Assembly (NCBI GenBank): GCA_002269645.1
Contig: NIVC01001623.1
Location: 1-64,000 of the forward strand
DNA: 64,000 bases
Reading direction: 5' to 3'
Source: Macrostomum lignano
Lineage: Eukaryota
In this document: positions 52,798 to 57,930 of the stretch, one piece after another
How positions within the stretch are numbered: the first letter of the stretch is position 1
Layout of the letters: each line of letters starts with the position of its first letter
Made by a program: the position numbers and the translations under genes
Notes under the pieces: generated by a model
The model's input: only the letters and a program-made list of their open reading frames with translations
Database searches by the model: none
What the model was told of the DNA's origin: nothing

Positions 52798-55700
52798 AAA
52801 CCGCTTTGACTCTGTTGGAAACATCAGCCAAGGTGATGAGGATCAAATACAGTCGAGAACAGCTTCTCAATTTGAATAAGCAGGAGTTGCAGATGCCATA
52901 TGAAATGCAGGAGGAGGTCAGAATGCACAGCGATTTGAGAATTCATACTCCTGATGTGAGTTCTGATTTTTATTTTAGTACCTCTTTGGTATCATTGTGT
53001 AGTAAGGCATAGTTTAGTGTGTAATTCAATTTGCGTTTTCACTACTAATAGTAGTTTCAAGCTGCGAAAATATCCTAAAATTGGTTAGTCGAGGCTTTGA
53101 GGGATTTCTTAAAAGTAAAGAGCCAGCTGGCCTCTGAGGAAGCATCTTGGTTTTGTCTCGCATAGAGACGCCTAACCGCAGTCACTTCTGTGAAACTTGT
53201 CTCTGCCTGGCTGAAAGCTTGTAATGAGTGAGTAGGCTGGGTTGGAGGGTAATAGTGGATCGGGAGGGGCTGTGGGTAGCTGTATAGGAAGGCAGGCCTA
53301 TACCTGTACCAAGGTGCTCTGACGGTATCCCTCAGGCGCCCTCTGAGCGTACAGCCAGCGACCCTATTAAAGCTGGGGTGTGCCAGAACCAGGACTGAGT
53401 CTGAGCAGGACGAGACCGTTGGCACGGTCACTATAAAAATGGCGGGTTGGCGAAGCAAAGGGTGAAACAGTCCCGGCGAATAGCCCTCCTGCCGCTTCAA
53501 AGATAAGAGACTGTCTGGCAAGAGTACCCGGGGTTTAGTTGGGGGGAGGCTCCTTCGGGTGGCCACGGCCGTGGGGGCGGTCTTATGACCGGTGTTTTGG
53601 CCTATCTAACCCAGGAGAAGGCACGGGCTCCCCTGAATGGTTCTCTCTTCCATGGCCCCACTGTCCCCCCGTTCCTATACGCTTATGAGTAGCCTAGACT
53701 GCAGAACCCACGACTGCAACAGGAAGATAACAACTTTGGAAATATCGCAATGAGTAGCGGCTCCCTGGTTTGGTACCATTGCAATAGTGCAAGACTACAT
53801 TGAATAGCGAACGACCTAATAAAGCAGTCACGCACTCACTTTTACACTTTTTAGGACCGAACCGCGAGAAGGCGTCTGAATTCAAGCATGAAAGAAAGAA
53901 ACATACGCGAGGTAGGGCTTCCTTAAACATCAGTCACGATAAGAATTGACAATGTAGCTCGCTTAGTTTAGAAGCATAAACAGAAATGAAAGCGCAAACT
54001 CGTTGATATTAAGTATTGCCTTCATTAGGCCTCCAATTGGGTCCAAGTCGACTTCCGCTTTCATTCTTTTTTAATCACAATATTTTTATTTCGCGTAACT
54101 CTTGCAAAGAGTTTAACGAACTGCAGCAGTGGAAAGTGCTTCCAAATAAAACATTTCAGGAAGTCAATAGCATCAGAGAAGCAGCCGAGGAAAGGGACGA
54201 CAAGCTGAAGATTCTGAACAGCGATGAAGACCTTAAAAGGGTACTCTAAAGAATGTCGAATCTTTTCAATTTACTTTGCGGATAACAGATGCATTTTGAT
54301 CCTCTTAAACTTTCAGTGGTCTGAATTAATCTTCAAGCTGCTGAACTCAGACAATGTTTCAACAGCCTTTCAGGTACAATGCTGTAGTCCGGACTCCTGG
54401 GGACTCTAGCTAGTACGAGCGTAGCTTTAGAAATTTGAACTGATCAGAAAATTAACAGATAAAAAATTTAACCAATAGCTATTATCGCTAGCTTAGGCTA
54501 CAATTAACAAATAAGTTGTACCGTCCCACATTGCAGCCCGTCTCCAAAATTTGGTGCTCAAAATTTGGCGCTCTGGAACGAGTAAGATACTTCGGTTGAT
54601 GACAAACGATACGCTCGTAATTAAGCAGGTTATTAAGTTTAGTTTACGTCATGTCTGCTTTGATTGCAGCCGATTCTTGATTGGATGGAGTTGAAGGCCT
54701 TGGCTAAAGACATTCGATCTGCATTCGAGGCAAATGAGATGCCCAGCTCACCAAATCCGTTGTCAGATCCGGAGCAGCTGAACGAGGCCATCAAACAGCA
54801 CCGCGATTCTATCCTGTAAGTCAGGGGCCGGTAAAATGTTTCACCTCAAGGGCCAAATAAATAGCCTATAGCGCATGACTGCGGGTCAGAGGAGGGGGAG
54901 AGAAGAGGAGACAAGAGGAGAGAAGGGAGCTGAGAAGAGACACCAGCCTTGAACAAGCCTTGCTATTTTGGACTTTCAAAGGACCCGAAGGTCGGATAGA
55001 GAGGCTTTGCGGGCCGGAGTTTTCCGACCTCTGCTGAGTCGAACATGCAATTGCAGGTCGCTCTAATCTGCATTAACAGTAAACACCTAAACACCTACCA
55101 TCGGTTAGTAGTATTGTAATCAAGGACTACTGAGGGGGGAATTCAATTCAACATTGTTGCAGGTATCATGTAAAGTCCTGAAATCTTTGATGACCCATTT
55201 CTGTTTTGGTCAATCTTCATTTTTAATAAGTTAACTTGGCTTAGTGCTGTATAATATCTTATGCTTGATCCGTGATCGTAATGCCTATAAGAAAATTATC
55301 GCTGTTCTAGCTCGTATATGAAGGAACACCAAAAATATTTACAGTTTTCTTGGCCATCTGTTTGTGGCCGGCAGTATGTCAGCCAGTGCCTATTGCTGTC
55401 TGCACAAAATCGCTCTGTGTCAGCTGAGTTATTATCACAGCGAACGAGACCAGCTCTGGATGGACGGCTTGCAAGAAACTCTGGAGAAGCTAATGGTAAT
55501 ACCTGCATACTTCCAATTTACTACATGGCTATCAATACCGCCCAAATACCCAGGTACTCTTGCTTACCTTTGCAGATGCTAGTGAGTCGGAGCCAGCACA
55601 TCTTGGCGTATTTCTGCGACATCGACAAGGCGCTCAACCAACACATTGGAAAGGCTCAGATTGTAAGGCTACTGTATGAACGTAAAAGTTTAATGCGGCC

Positions 55701-57930
55701 AAGTTTAGACAAGGGCTGGATTTCTAATCATCCGGCTCTGATACGGTTTCTTAGAAAACCAAATCCAATGAATTCCAGCCGGTTTTGAGCTCTTCATGCG
55801 GTCTTAGCTCGTATTTGTGTGTTTTTCTAAACCGCATCGGAACGAACAGATCATAAACCCAGCCTTTCAGTTGTAACAAATAATTCCTCTCGCATTCCTA
55901 TCAAATCTTTGTAGTGGAATGACCTGTTTGCTAAGCAACTCCGACTAGCGATTCGCGAAAGAGCATTCCAGGTATGCGATAATTTTGCAGCTTATCCTTT
56001 TGAAGATTGTGTTCGTATATACTCAGCAACAGTCAAAAGTTCCACCCTCCAAATTGCGACAACTTCACACTCACAATTCAACCCTCAAGTTACGCAACTA
56101 AGCCGCCGTGAGGAAGGGAAGGTTGATTGAATATCAACACTCGTAGTAAACGTCAGTCGCACAAAATCATAAATTTTTTATGCAATATTCAGTTAGAATC
56201 GCGATGCGTGTGGGATCCCCTTGCATGCAGAAGTGCGGCGACTCTGCGGGGCATCCCAAGGATGAGGCGGCGCAGAAAGTCTTGGGGAAGCTGCTCCGAA
56301 GCGTTTTCAATGGCATGACGCAGAGCTCTCCGCAACATTCTATGGTGGATTCTCTTTTCGAATGCTACTTTTTAGGAAGTCCCAGACATGCTCGATGGGA
56401 TTCATGTCTGGGGACCGGGAAGGCCAGCGCAGAGTGCGCAGCTGTAGCTGTTCCTTCAGTTGATTAACAGCATCGGCTTGGTGTGGCGGGGCGTTGTTCC
56501 TGGGCTTAGGTCTGCTTAGTGGCCAGGTGTGGACATCCTGGCGTCACTCGCAATACTCGTCACTGTTGCTGAGTATATATGCTGAGGCGTTTATTGACCT
56601 GAAAACTTCACACGACATTACCAGAATTGTTTCATGATGAATTTCAGCCGAAATCCGAGGGCTGGAAGGCGGTCTGCAACAAGATCAGGGTGAGCGAGCT
56701 TATCAAAATAGCGCTGAGTTGAAATTCCGTTTGATATTTAGTTGCTACTTTAACTACGTTGAAAATACTGAAAATATTCAGCTGCATCCGAAACCTGATG
56801 GGGTTGAGAATCTGGCCAGGCAGTCTCGAGAAATTTTCACTAACCCTGAAATTGAAGAACATGTAGGACTGGAGGAGCAGTACGACTGCATTGTGTGAGT
56901 AGATTAGCACTTGCTCAACTTCAGCTAATGTGAGAATGTTACTTTCATCTGAATGCATCAGTCTGCTCATGTTTTCAGGTTCACGGCTTATCTAGTAAAT
57001 CAAGATGAGAACTTAAAAAGCTCAACAGCATTTGAGTGCATGGTTGAGCTGCTGTCATGGAGGCTGAGGTCAACTGACGGCAATCTTGATGACGCGCAGC
57101 AGGTTGTGCGAAGAGCCCTGGATGAGATTTTAAAGTACGAGCCCAGGCAGTCACATCTGTTTGAAGAGAAACTTTCTAAGGAGGAAAAAGAAGCGCTTGA
57201 GTCTTGGGAGGCAGCCGCAAAAAAGGACACCTACTTCTATTATGAGCGTCCTGACCTGCTGAGTGGCTACACCAAGAAGCACATGCCTAAGAAAGTAAAA
57301 AAGTTCAAAATATCTTTTGAAAGGCAGCTCAGAAAGCATCTTGATAAACACTGGAACAAGAAAACAAACAGCTTCCGTGTGCTTTCATTGGGCTGCGGGC
57401 CGGGTAGCGAGCTGCTGGCGGTACTGGATGTCTGGGCAGAGCGAACCAACCAGCAAGGCGAGTTTAGCTGCATTGGCGTTGATAAATTCTGGTGGCCGAA
57501 GAAGGCCTTCTTAACCAACTGCTGCAGAATTTCGAATGCTTCAGTGAAGTCAGTTTTTGTGCAGCAGGATATGATGGAGTTCGTGCAAAACTCAGTAACT
57601 GAATTCGACATCGCCGTCTTGAGCTTTGTTGGTGGAGTTTTTGATTCAGCTGAAGTATTTGTTGAGGATCTGGCACGGCTGCTTCCAGAAGATGGCGCCA
57701 TTTTTCTAATTGACAACTACACAAACAGCGGGTTGAATCTCTTAAATCTGGGATTTTATCCAACGGCTATTTGGCTGTCACTGCTAGATGAAAGACAGAC
57801 AACTGCCGAAGAGCTGCACCTCGCAAAATTTTGTCTGGTCTACCGAAAGTGTGAGGTGAGCACGAGTTACTTTGTTGGAGTTCATCGTAGCTTAGAGTTA
57901 TTCTACAATGAATGCTTTGTTTTAGACTAA
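52798..57930 (+). CDS. Predicted eIF4G-like (YxxxxL-phi + MIF4G) - class I methyltransferase fusion protein, 11 exons, 639 aa from ATG 52836
   Basis: GT-AG exons 52798(ATG 52836)-52955, 54160-54240, 54317-54373, 54670-54815, 55345-55495, 55576-55662, 55915-55971, 56231-56344, 56648-56689, 56782-56894, 56979-57930 join in phase (1920 nt). Motifs [43 protein letters not shown]; last exon [33 protein letters not shown]. Confidence 0.72.

What the first reader, a model, noticed from the sequence alone, without database searches (positions are those of the whole stretch)
52798..57930. eIF4G-like protein fused to a SAM methyltransferase: a candidate cap-targeted RNA/protein methylation system
Seen: eleven GT-AG exons, most absent from the ORF track, join in phase into 639 aa. 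Exon 1 has [10 protein letters not shown], a canonical eIF4E-binding YxxxxL-phi motif. Exons 2-5 align by eye to the eIF4G MIF4G/HEAT-1 domain: [24 protein letters not shown] vs [35 protein letters not shown] vs [21 protein letters not shown] vs IKFIGELFKLK. The last exon is a complete class I MTase, whose [13 protein letters not shown] and [15 protein letters not shown] recall the cap guanine-N7 MTase RNMT (VLDLGCGKGGDLL; FDICSCQFVCHYSFES), although these motifs are partly generic. Known: eIF4G uses this motif plus MIF4G to bind eIF4E and eIF4A. I know of no eIF4G family member carrying an MTase. Inference: an enzyme recruited to capped mRNA through eIF4E to methylate the cap, the RNA or an initiation factor.
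Basis: partly seen in the sequence, partly recalled or inferred. Interest (0 to 1): 0.88.

Follow-up and report, generated by a model that had tools for sequence, protein, structure and literature searches.

The report
Flatworm eIF4G-like protein fused to methyltransferase
In the flatworm Macrostomum lignano, one expressed gene joins a shortened, fast-evolved copy of the translation scaffold eIF4G (cap-protein docking motif plus MIF4G domain) to an orphan SAM-dependent methyltransferase, a domain combination I found no report of; its substrate is unknown.

Summary
The window is Macrostomum lignano DNA. The finding is a real, already annotated gene (BOX15_Mlig012580g1, PAA65732.1, 'hypothetical protein'), and its GenBank model comes from RNA-seq transcripts. 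The true CDS has 13 GT-AG exons (52836-58273) and 726 aa.

The eIF4G-like reading holds, but only against M. lignano's own eIF4G:
- BLASTP of residues 118-298 against it gives E=3e-7.
- No shuffle of 1000 reaches the Smith-Waterman score.
- hhalign is colinear over the whole MIF4G.
- A phase-2 intron lies in the codon just before FLGHLF/FIGELF in both genes.
- The N-terminal [10 protein letters not shown] matches the worm's eIF4G motif KYDRGFLLSL.

Pfam's MIF4G model and the PDB sequence search miss the domain, and no confident fold was obtained.

Exons 12-13 encode a class I SAM methyltransferase, confirmed by Pfam Methyltransf_23 and by AlphaFold plus Foldseek. It belongs to a family with at least 30 loci in this genome and no relatives found elsewhere. 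RNMT kinship is not supported.

eIF4E binding, catalysis and any cap-directed role remain inference. I rate it a new variant of a known kind and moderately interesting.

The parts
52798..52835 (+). 5' UTR segment that starts right after a splice acceptor (ttgcag|AAACC). It is a likely SL trans-splice acceptor, or a cis acceptor used in the fused UniProt models.
   Evidence: in-frame stop at 52788, first ATG at 52836; the UniProt models A0A1I8FYA5 and A0A1I8J7Q8 join the upstream gene's exons (38726-41454) to this acceptor, while GenBank keeps two genes. Use for trans-splicing is inferred, not shown.
52836..52955 (+). Exon 1 (aa 1-40): start codon and eIF4E-binding-type motif
52848..52868 (+). 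Canonical 4E-binding motif YSREQLL (Y5-L11), Arg at motif position 2, in the context [13 protein letters not shown]
   Evidence: for coordinates. It matches the Y-x4-L-hydrophobic consensus with R/K at position 2 (PMC4573856). It resembles the M. lignano eIF4G motifs KYDRGFLLSL and TYDRDFLLKL. Smith-Waterman against the C2213 eIF4G motif region: 7 of 2000 shuffles reach the score.
53855..53911 (+). Exon 2 (aa 41-59); holds ERNIR, which aligns to the ERNIRSILNK start of the M. lignano eIF4G MIF4G
54160..54240 (+). Exon 3 (aa 60-86)
54317..54373 (+). Exon 4 (aa 87-105), WSELIFKLL..., aligned to the eIF4G helix VIDLIFEKA
54537..54581 (+). Exon 5, a 15-aa microexon (aa 106-120, PVSKIWCSKFGALER)
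   Evidence: present in PAA65732.1
54670..54815 (+). Exon 6 (aa 121-169); ends ...DSI + CT, the first two bases of the L169 codon
54816..55344 (+). Phase-2 intron inside the codon just before FLGHLF. It has the same position and phase as the intron before FIGELF/FIGELY in two M. lignano eIF4G paralogues.
55345..55495 (+). Exon 7 (aa 169-219); starts (L)FLGHLFVAG, the counterpart of the MIF4G signature FIGELF
55576..55662 (+). Exon 8 (aa 220-248)
55915..55971 (+). Exon 9 (aa 249-267)
56648..56689 (+). Exon 10 (aa 268-281)
56782..56894 (+). Exon 11 (aa 282-319). IRLHPKP spans exons 10 and 11 and matches IRLHERP just after the MIF4G of M. lignano eIF4G. This is the last eIF4G-like exon.
53894..56796 (+). 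Genomic span of the MIF4G-like region (aa 54-286, exons 2-11)
   Evidence: hhalign colinear over query 60-279 against the whole MIF4G. BLASTP 118-298, E=3e-7.
56979..57855 (+). Exon 12 (aa 319-611): helical lead-in plus the class I SAM methyltransferase core. Similarity to the paralogues begins at the first residues of this exon.
57379..57417 (+). Methyltransferase motif I, [13 protein letters not shown]. The residues L454 S455 L456 G457 G459 P460 G461 L464 L465 are invariant across 18 family members.
57469..57483 (+). CIGVD: G485, V486 and D487 are invariant in the family. I take D487 to be the acidic SAM-ribose-binding residue at the end of strand beta-2.
   Evidence: The role of D487 is inferred from general class I methyltransferase anatomy.
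57856..57925 (+).
57926..58273 (+). Exon 13 (aa 612-726 plus the TAG stop): C-terminal domain of unknown fold with an acidic DDDEFNSESEEFF stretch. Only the 40%-identical paralogues share it.

Best explanation
This is a Macrostomum lineage chimeric gene. Exons 1-11 are a compacted, fast-diverged eIF4G paralogue: an N-terminal eIF4G-type eIF4E-binding motif, a short linker and a MIF4G-like helical domain, without the MA3 and W2 domains. They are joined through a phase-2 intron to the two-exon module (exons 12-13) of an orphan class I SAM methyltransferase family that has expanded in this genome. Shown: the single transcript-derived CDS, the homology of the N-terminal part to M. lignano eIF4G, the methyltransferase fold, and intact SAM-binding motifs. 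Inferred: the N-terminal motif docks the protein on the dorsal face of an eIF4E-family cap-binding protein, in competition with eIF4G. The MIF4G-like domain then serves as a platform, possibly for an eIF4A/DDX-type helicase. The methyltransferase is thereby held at the 5' end of capped mRNPs, where it methylates something near the cap. Because eIF4E covers the cap guanine, a cap-adjacent nucleotide or a protein of the complex is a more likely target than the guanine itself. The substrate is unknown.
For: Gene model: the 13 exons translate exactly to PAA65732.1, and GenBank models for this assembly come from RNA-seq transcripts (PMC5730564).

eIF4G homology:
- BLASTP against M. lignano eIF4G rebuilt from its exons: 36.6 bits, E=3e-7, 25% identity over 191 columns, with compositional adjustment.
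- Smith-Waterman score 97. Residue shuffles average 37.6 +/- 6.2 and 12-aa block shuffles 48.2 +/- 8.5; 0 of 1000 of either kind reach 97.
- hhalign against an eIF4G/DAP5 profile: P=0.012, colinear over the whole MIF4G.
- Global hhalign z=5.5. Genuine M. lignano MIF4G controls give 5.7 (CWC22-like) and 8.3 (UPF2-like). 0 of 120 block shuffles reach the score, and the reversed sequence scores 2.1.
- The top 5 of 2448 decoy ORFs are the eIF4G FIGELF exon.
- The intron position and phase before FLGHLF/FIGELF are identical in two eIF4G paralogues.
- The 4E motif [10 protein letters not shown] resembles the worm's KYDRGFLLSL.

Methyltransferase: Methyltransf_23 scores 28.7 bits against a cut-off of 27. 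Motif I and D487 are invariant in 18 paralogues. The AlphaFold core has pLDDT of about 75-91 for most blocks of residues 380-560. Foldseek finds 376 PDB matches at E<=0.001, all listed ones being class I methyltransferase-fold proteins.

Precedent for the logic in trans: the T. brucei EIF4E5-EIF4G1 complex carries a guanylyltransferase/m7G-methyltransferase protein (PMC4105752).
Against: - Pfam MIF4G gives no hit at E<=10 on the protein. The MIF4G model searched in six frames over the genome hits the canonical MIF4G genes but nothing on this contig.
- The PDB sequence search finds no MIF4G.
- No confident 3D model of the N-terminal part was obtained: pLDDT is 35-58 in both runs, so the HEAT fold is not shown.
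- Similarity to human eIF4G1 alone is marginal (19 of 1000 shuffles reach it).
- No orthologue exists outside M. lignano in 1.84 billion representative proteins, so conservation cannot be used as evidence of function.
- The closest methyltransferase paralogues show no eIF4G-like exons within 12 kb upstream. More distant ones carry Q-rich coiled-coil tails instead. The family's native substrate therefore need not have anything to do with mRNA.
- eIF4E binding, helicase binding and catalysis are all untested.
Confidence: 0.6

Rival explanations
1. It is an eIF4G-derived competitor, a 4E-BP-like regulator. It binds eIF4E and blocks or reshapes eIF4F, as Mextli, 4E-T or Cup do. The methyltransferase module would then be a structural or binding appendage, or act on something unrelated to the mRNA 5' end.
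For: The 4E motif is of the eIF4G type. No MA3 or W2 domain appears among the Pfam hits. Mextli shows that a MIF4G-like domain and a 4E motif can occur in a non-eIF4G regulator (PMC4573856).
Against: The SAM-binding residues are invariant with the rest of the family, which argues for a working enzyme. Nothing in the data separates this reading from the tethered-enzyme reading.
Confidence: 0.2
2. The N-terminal part is a decayed eIF4G remnant, or an unrelated helical domain, that no longer binds eIF4E. The protein is then simply one more member of the expanded orphan methyltransferase family, with a lineage-specific adaptor domain.
For: The Pfam and PDB sequence searches miss MIF4G. Identity to the worm's own eIF4G is only 25%. 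There are no orthologues from which to judge constraint. A bare Y-x4-L-hydrophobic motif is expected about 0.6 times per 700-aa protein by chance (my estimate from residue frequencies).
Against: The ORF stays open through 11 small exons. The motif sits at the very N-terminus, with Arg at position 2 and an LLxL context like the worm's eIF4G. The colinear similarity covers the whole domain and its flanks: ERNIR, LIF, FLGHLF, IRLHxKP.
Confidence: 0.15
3. The single CDS is an annotation artefact. Two neighbouring genes of one polycistronic transcription unit were joined by the transcript assembler, one eIF4G-like and one a methyltransferase.
For: About 7% of assembled M. lignano transcripts are polycistronic precursors (PMC5730564). 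UniProt models already fuse the upstream gene Mlig017128 to this one. The 40% paralogue may start with its own Met inside the methyltransferase exon.
Against: The TBONE pipeline cuts transcription units at trans-splice and poly(A) sites, and it kept this gene whole. The exon 11/12 junction splits a codon (GT|G, phase 2) and keeps one ORF open across all 12 junctions. An independent copy on contig C3853 has the same exons. No stop or poly(A)-type gap separates the two parts.
Confidence: 0.05

Closest known systems
eIF4G (eIF4G1/3-type), in particular the M. lignano eIF4G paralogue on contig C2213
   Same: Both have an N-terminal Y-x-R-x2-L-L 4E-binding motif followed by a MIF4G region. The similarity is colinear from ERNIR (domain start) through FLGHLF/FIGELF to IRLHxKP just after the domain. 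Both have a phase-2 intron before FIGELF.
   Different: Only about 25% identical and below Pfam's MIF4G threshold. It lacks the long N-terminal region and the MA3 and W2 domains. The distance from motif to MIF4G is about 45 aa. It carries a methyltransferase, which I know of in no other eIF4G family member (my knowledge, plus literature searches that found none).
Mextli (Mxt) and other modular 4E-BPs
   Same: A MIF4G-like domain and a canonical 4E-binding motif occur in a protein that is not eIF4G and competes with it for eIF4E (PMC4573856).
   Different: Mxt has the order MIF4G-like, KH domain, C-terminal motifs, and no enzyme domain. Here the motif is N-terminal, as in eIF4G, and the partner domain is a methyltransferase.
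Trypanosoma brucei EIF4E5-EIF4G1 complex with the 117.5-kDa guanylyltransferase/m7G-methyltransferase protein
   Same: An eIF4E/eIF4G-type module is physically coupled to a methyltransferase, which implies modification at mRNA 5' ends (PMC4105752).
   Different: There the coupling is between separate polypeptides, and the enzyme is a recognisable capping-type m7G methyltransferase. Here it is a covalent fusion to a methyltransferase of no recognisable substrate class.
Generic class I SAM methyltransferases (Pfam Methyltransf_23/25/31/34)
   Same: GxGxG motif I, an acidic residue after the second strand, and a Rossmann-like fold.
   Different: It forms its own orphan family. Only two marginal hits (E about 1e-4) turn up among 1.84 billion representative proteins. 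There are at least 30 loci in M. lignano, often in clusters. The family has a conserved helical lead-in (W..KDK..YY..PEF..YT).
RNMT (mRNA cap guanine-N7 methyltransferase)
   Same: Motif I looks alike ([13 protein letters not shown] against VLDLGCGKGGDLL). RNMT is the top hit of the family profile against PDB, though not significantly.
   Different: E=0.06, 28 residues only, no Pox_MCEL Pfam hit, and absent from the top 50 structural matches.

Membership tests
MIF4G domain / eIF4G family | Match to Pfam MIF4G (PF02854) at or above the gathering score | tested here: not met
   No MIF4G hit at E<=10 on the 711-aa 12-exon model, which lacks only the 15-aa microexon, and none at E<=0.01 on the 726-aa protein. 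The six-frame PF02854 search of the genome finds eIF4G, DAP5-like, UPF2-like and CWC22-like genes but nothing on contig C1623.
MIF4G domain / eIF4G family | Significant sequence similarity to a genuine eIF4G MIF4G | tested here: met
   BLASTP against M. lignano eIF4G E=3e-7. Smith-Waterman 97, with 0 of 1000 residue or block shuffles reaching it. hhalign P=0.012 and global z=5.5, within the range of true MIF4G controls. Against human eIF4G1 alone the result is only marginal (p about 0.02).
MIF4G domain / eIF4G family | Shared gene structure with eIF4G (intron position and phase) | tested here: met
   A phase-2 intron lies in the codon before F-[IL]-G-x-L-[FY] in this gene and in two M. lignano eIF4G paralogues. 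The other introns do not coincide exactly. My estimate of the chance of one exact match is about 0.03.
MIF4G domain / eIF4G family | Five-HEAT-repeat (ten-helix) fold | tested here: inconclusive
   Both AlphaFold runs predict an all-helical N-terminal part, but at pLDDT 35-58. There are no homologues to build an alignment from.
MIF4G domain / eIF4G family | MA3 and W2 domains and the eIF3/PABP-binding regions of full eIF4G | tested here: not met
   No MA3 or W2 Pfam hit. Residues 319-726 are the methyltransferase module. The protein is therefore eIF4G-derived, not an eIF4G orthologue.
MIF4G domain / eIF4G family | Binding of eIF4A or another DEAD-box helicase | not testable with these tools
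   Needs pull-down or complex prediction.
eIF4E-binding proteins (canonical 4E-BM) | Y-x4-L-hydrophobic motif, extended consensus with R/K at position 2 | tested here: met
   Y5-S-R-E-Q-L-L11 with R7 at position 2. Position 9 is N; M. lignano eIF4G has Q there, as does human eIF4G1 from my memory. Sources; consensus from PMC4573856.
eIF4E-binding proteins (canonical 4E-BM) | Physical binding to eIF4E | not testable with these tools
   M. lignano has at least 5 types of eIF4E-family genes to test.
Class I SAM-dependent methyltransferases | Motif I GxGxG, an acidic residue after strand 2, and a Rossmann-like alternating strand-helix fold | tested here: met
   Methyltransf_23 at 28.7 bits against a cut-off of 27. 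Invariant LSLGCGPG and GVD. The AlphaFold core is confident. The Foldseek hits are class I methyltransferases, probability 1.00, best E=2.4e-7.
RNMT / cap guanine-N7 methyltransferases (Pox_MCEL) | Family-level sequence or structural match beyond motif I | tested here: not met
   No Pox_MCEL hit. The family profile against PDB gives RNMT at E=0.06, over motif I only. RNMT is not among the top 50 Foldseek matches.

The most novel reading that the evidence does not exclude
The protein is an eIF4E-docked methyltransferase. In a flatworm whose mRNAs carry either m7G caps or trimethylguanosine caps acquired by trans-splicing, it marks a subset of capped mRNPs. It would do so by methylating cap-adjacent nucleotides or an eIF4F component, using an eIF4G-derived module as its targeting device. 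That would be a cytoplasmic, cap-complex-directed methylation system of a kind not described in animals.
Probability: 0.2. Interest if true: 0.85.

Novelty: new variant of a known kind. Interest (0 to 1): 0.62.

Why it matters
eIF4G-type scaffolds are known to bring helicases, eIF3 and PABP to the cap. Enzymes that modify mRNA 5' ends are known to be recruited by other means, such as the Pol II CTD or, in trypanosomes, separate subunits of eIF4F-like complexes. A covalent fusion of an eIF4G-derived 4E-binding/MIF4G module to a methyltransferase would be a natural experiment in tethering a modifying enzyme to the cap-binding complex. The proposed targeting device is a seven-residue motif, so the hypothesis can be tested directly by mutating it. 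M. lignano is a transgenic, RNAi-amenable model. The case also shows how a lineage-specific, expanded enzyme family can be redirected by exon-level fusion. It shows too that standard domain models (Pfam MIF4G) miss such diverged modules, whereas comparison with the organism's own paralogues and with intron positions recovers them. The caveat is that the gene is so far known from one species only, and every functional step is inferred.

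Tried and rejected
- Single-sequence AlphaFold of the 726-aa protein gave pLDDT 40 and was useless.
- AlphaFold with 17 genome-derived paralogue rows rescued only the methyltransferase core. Foldseek on that model gave a generic class I methyltransferase fold with no specific family and nothing for the N-terminal part.
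- Searching for orthologues failed. The word-indexed search found only the M. lignano cluster. The exhaustive HMMER search of 1.84 billion representatives found the protein itself plus two marginal methyltransferase hits. One of those two is a generic methyltransferase; the other has only a weak Methyltransf_34 match.
- I looked for eIF4G-like exons within 12 kb upstream of the 40%-identical paralogues on C301, C3040 and C406, using tblastn, phmmer and MIF4G HMMs. Nothing credible appeared.
- RNMT kinship is rejected.
- A link between the methyltransferase paralogues and transposable elements, suggested by a reverse transcriptase ORF next to one copy, was not pursued. The paralogues look like tandemly clustered cellular genes.
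- Literature and supplement searches for Mlig012580 found nothing.

Full report
**What the window is.** The 64-kb window is eukaryotic DNA full of introns and retroelements. A protein search with my splice model returned one cluster, all from the free-living flatworm Macrostomum lignano. The window is contig C1623:1-64000 of a 764-Mb assembly.

**Checking the observation.** Eleven exons give 620 aa. Two things were missed.
- The sequence after ...RKCE is a 70-nt GT-AG intron (57856-57925). Splicing it opens a further 115 codons, ending at the TAG at 58273.
- GenBank's PAA65732.1 also contains a 15-aa microexon (54537-54581).

With these, 13 exons translate letter for letter into PAA65732.1, 726 aa. 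Every intron is GT-AG with a pyrimidine-rich acceptor. The figure of 639 aa could not be reproduced.

GenBank gene models for this assembly are not ab initio predictions. They come from StringTie/TACO assemblies of RNA-seq plus a de novo transcriptome. The TBONE pipeline then cut them into single genes at experimentally mapped trans-splice and poly(A) sites (PMC5730564). That pipeline kept this gene whole and separated it from the upstream gene Mlig017128 (38726-41454). Two UniProt models, by contrast, fuse that upstream gene through the acceptor at 52797|52798. The exon 11/12 junction splits a codon (phase 2), and one ORF runs through all 12 junctions. A second full copy lies on contig C3853. 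A third, on C1624, matched only from about residue 165 onward. I could not inspect reads myself, so the single-mRNA claim rests on the published pipeline.

**The methyltransferase half.**
- Pfam gives Methyltransf_23 just above threshold and nothing else of substance.
- The genome holds at least 30 loci that encode the same module. Three are near-identical copies of this gene. Three loci are about 40% identical and share the C-terminal exon. Many others are about 30% identical, and there the module is followed by a long Q-rich coiled-coil repeat. They often lie in clusters. One is in this window (21527-22228, minus strand) and another lies 25 kb downstream.
- An 18-sequence alignment shows invariant [8 protein letters not shown]..LL (motif I), GVD, W491, F528, L554 and D564, plus a conserved helical lead-in.
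- With that alignment, AlphaFold gives a confident Rossmann core (pLDDT about 75-91 for most blocks of residues 380-560). Foldseek returns hundreds of class I methyltransferases of every substrate class, and none stands out.
- The family profile's best PDB hit is human RNMT, but at E=0.06 and through motif I only. RNMT is not in the top 50 structural matches, and there is no Pox_MCEL hit.
- Outside M. lignano the family is practically invisible: two hits at E of about 1e-4 among 1.84 billion representatives.

Conclusion: this is a genuine, probably active class I SAM methyltransferase from an orphan, lineage-expanded family. Its substrate is not inferable, and the RNMT kinship is rejected.

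**The eIF4G-like half.** Standard tools say no.
- There is no Pfam MIF4G hit at E<=10.
- There is no PDB sequence hit.
- A six-frame search of the genome with PF02854 finds the worm's eIF4G, DAP5-like, UPF2-like and CWC22-like genes but nothing on this contig.
- AlphaFold without homologues is uninformative for residues 1-320.

I therefore tested the claim against real MIF4G sequences. These were human eIF4G1, eIF4GII and DAP5, checked against PDB entries 8HUJ, 1HU3 and 4IUL, and M. lignano's own genes rebuilt from genomic exons.

hhalign of residues 1-330 against an eIF4G/DAP5 profile gives P=0.012. In global mode the score is 5.5 SD above residue shuffles. It also exceeds all 120 block shuffles of 15 residues, which preserve local helical character. 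The reversed sequence scores 2.1. The same test gives z=5.7 and z=8.3 for the worm's genuine CWC22-like and UPF2-like MIF4G domains.

Pairwise comparison with the worm's eIF4G paralogue on C2213 is clearer.
- BLASTP gives 36.6 bits, E=3e-7, 25% identity over 191 columns.
- Smith-Waterman gives 97, and 0 of 1000 residue or block shuffles reach it.
- Against a decoy set of 2448 ORFs, the top five hits are the eIF4G FIGELF exon.
- The matches run from ERNIR (the domain's ERNIRSILNK start) through LIF and FLGHLF to IRLHPKP/IRLHERP just beyond the domain.
- Against human eIF4G1 alone the similarity is marginal. This explains why generic models miss the domain, and it suggests descent from a Macrostomum eIF4G paralogue.

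Gene structure adds independent evidence. In this gene the codon just before FLGHLF is split by a phase-2 intron (ATC CT|gt...ag|T TTT CTT GGC). In the eIF4G paralogue on C2213, the codon just before FIGELF is split in the same way, with both splice sites read (ATC AG|gt...ag|A TTC ATC GGC). In the paralogue on C218, a matching phase-2 acceptor precedes FIGELY. The other introns do not coincide exactly. I estimate the chance of one exact coincidence at about 3%.

**The eIF4E-binding motif.** [13 protein letters not shown] fits Y-x4-L-hydrophobic with Arg at motif position 2 (consensus from PMC4573856). It sits at the very N-terminus and resembles the worm's own eIF4G motifs KYDRGFLLSL and TYDRDFLLKL. 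Similarity to the C2213 motif region is reached by 7 of 2000 shuffles; similarity to the C218 region is not significant. The genome encodes at least five types of eIF4E-family genes as possible partners. Binding itself is untested.

**Synthesis.**
- Exons 1-11 are an eIF4G-derived module: the 4E-binding motif, about 45 aa of linker, and the MIF4G-like region with its immediate flanks. No MA3 or W2 domain is present.
- Exons 12-13 are the complete two-exon unit of the methyltransferase family, and paralogue similarity starts at the first residues of exon 12. The chimera is thus joined at an intron.
- The closest paralogues show no eIF4G-like exons within 12 kb upstream, so the fusion appears specific to this gene.

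The most likely mechanism is a methyltransferase tethered to eIF4E-bound mRNPs through the eIF4G-type motif. Alternatives are a 4E-BP-like competitor with an enzyme appendage, or a decayed adaptor with no eIF4E role. As noted for the trypanosome eIF4E5-eIF4G1 complex, which carries a capping-type enzyme in trans, a cap-binding protein and a cap-guanine methyltransferase would compete for the same substrate (PMC4105752). Cap-adjacent nucleotides or complex proteins are therefore more plausible targets than the cap guanine. Because M. lignano trans-splices many mRNAs, and metazoan SL trans-splicing yields trimethylguanosine caps (PMC3203607 abstract), discrimination between cap types is a conceivable context. 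I have no evidence for it.

**Novelty and verdict.** The gene is in GenBank and UniProt only as a hypothetical or methyltransferase-domain protein, and its eIF4G-derived half is not annotated. I found no paper on it, nor on any MIF4G-methyltransferase fusion. The architecture is a new variant built from known parts.
- The fusion gene is real: about 0.9.
- The N-terminal half is eIF4G-derived: about 0.85.
- It binds an eIF4E: about 0.5-0.6.
- It acts as a cap-complex-directed methylation system: about 0.2.

Interest is moderate to high for translation and RNA-modification specialists. It is tempered by the single-species distribution and the absence of any functional data.

Noticed in passing
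window 14520-18578 (-): An uninterrupted 1352-aa Ty3/gypsy-type pol ORF (protease, RT, RNase H, integrase), so it looks like a young LTR retrotransposon copy.
   Followed up: partly
window ~45200-49900 (-): A BEL/Pao-type retroelement with integrase/DUF5641, Peptidase_A17, RVT_1 and gag-like DUF1759. It lies in the 11-kb gap between the upstream gene and the finding's gene.
   Followed up: partly
window ~2000-10000: A 28% GC island, against about 45-55% elsewhere, with long minus-strand ORFs. The 1045-aa ORF at 5012-8149 has a recombination endonuclease VII domain, and its neighbours have no Pfam match. Its origin is unexplained.
   Followed up: partly
window 27554-32696 (+): Exons of a Slo-type potassium channel (Ion_trans_2 and Slo-like RCK domains).
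   Followed up: no
window 21527-22228 (-), and G000:C1623:83200-83610: Two more members of the same orphan methyltransferase family flank the finding's gene on this contig. Genome-wide there are at least 30 loci, often in pairs a few kb to about 16 kb apart, many with long Q-rich (LQEQQRKQM)n tails.
   Followed up: partly
window 38726-41454 (+): The upstream gene BOX15_Mlig017128g1 (178 aa in GenBank). Two UniProt models fuse it to the finding's gene across 11 kb through the acceptor at 52797|52798. This suggests a shared transcription unit or a mis-join.
   Followed up: partly
L031/L050 (G000:C2213), L036/L051 (G000:C218), L025-L030, L035: M. lignano carries at least two eIF4G1-like paralogue types, each in several copies, with canonical 4E motifs. 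It also has DAP5-like (MIF4G region without introns), UPF2-like and CWC22-like MIF4G genes.
   Followed up: partly
L017 3952-5599 (-): A reverse transcriptase-type ORF lies about 1.6 kb upstream of one Q-rich methyltransferase paralogue on the same strand. This is probably just a neighbouring transposable element; it was not examined further.
   Followed up: no
L004 1-1185 (G000:C301): A tandem repeat of about 1.2 kb, open in several frames, lies roughly 300 nt upstream of the methyltransferase exon of the 40%-identical paralogue.
   Followed up: no
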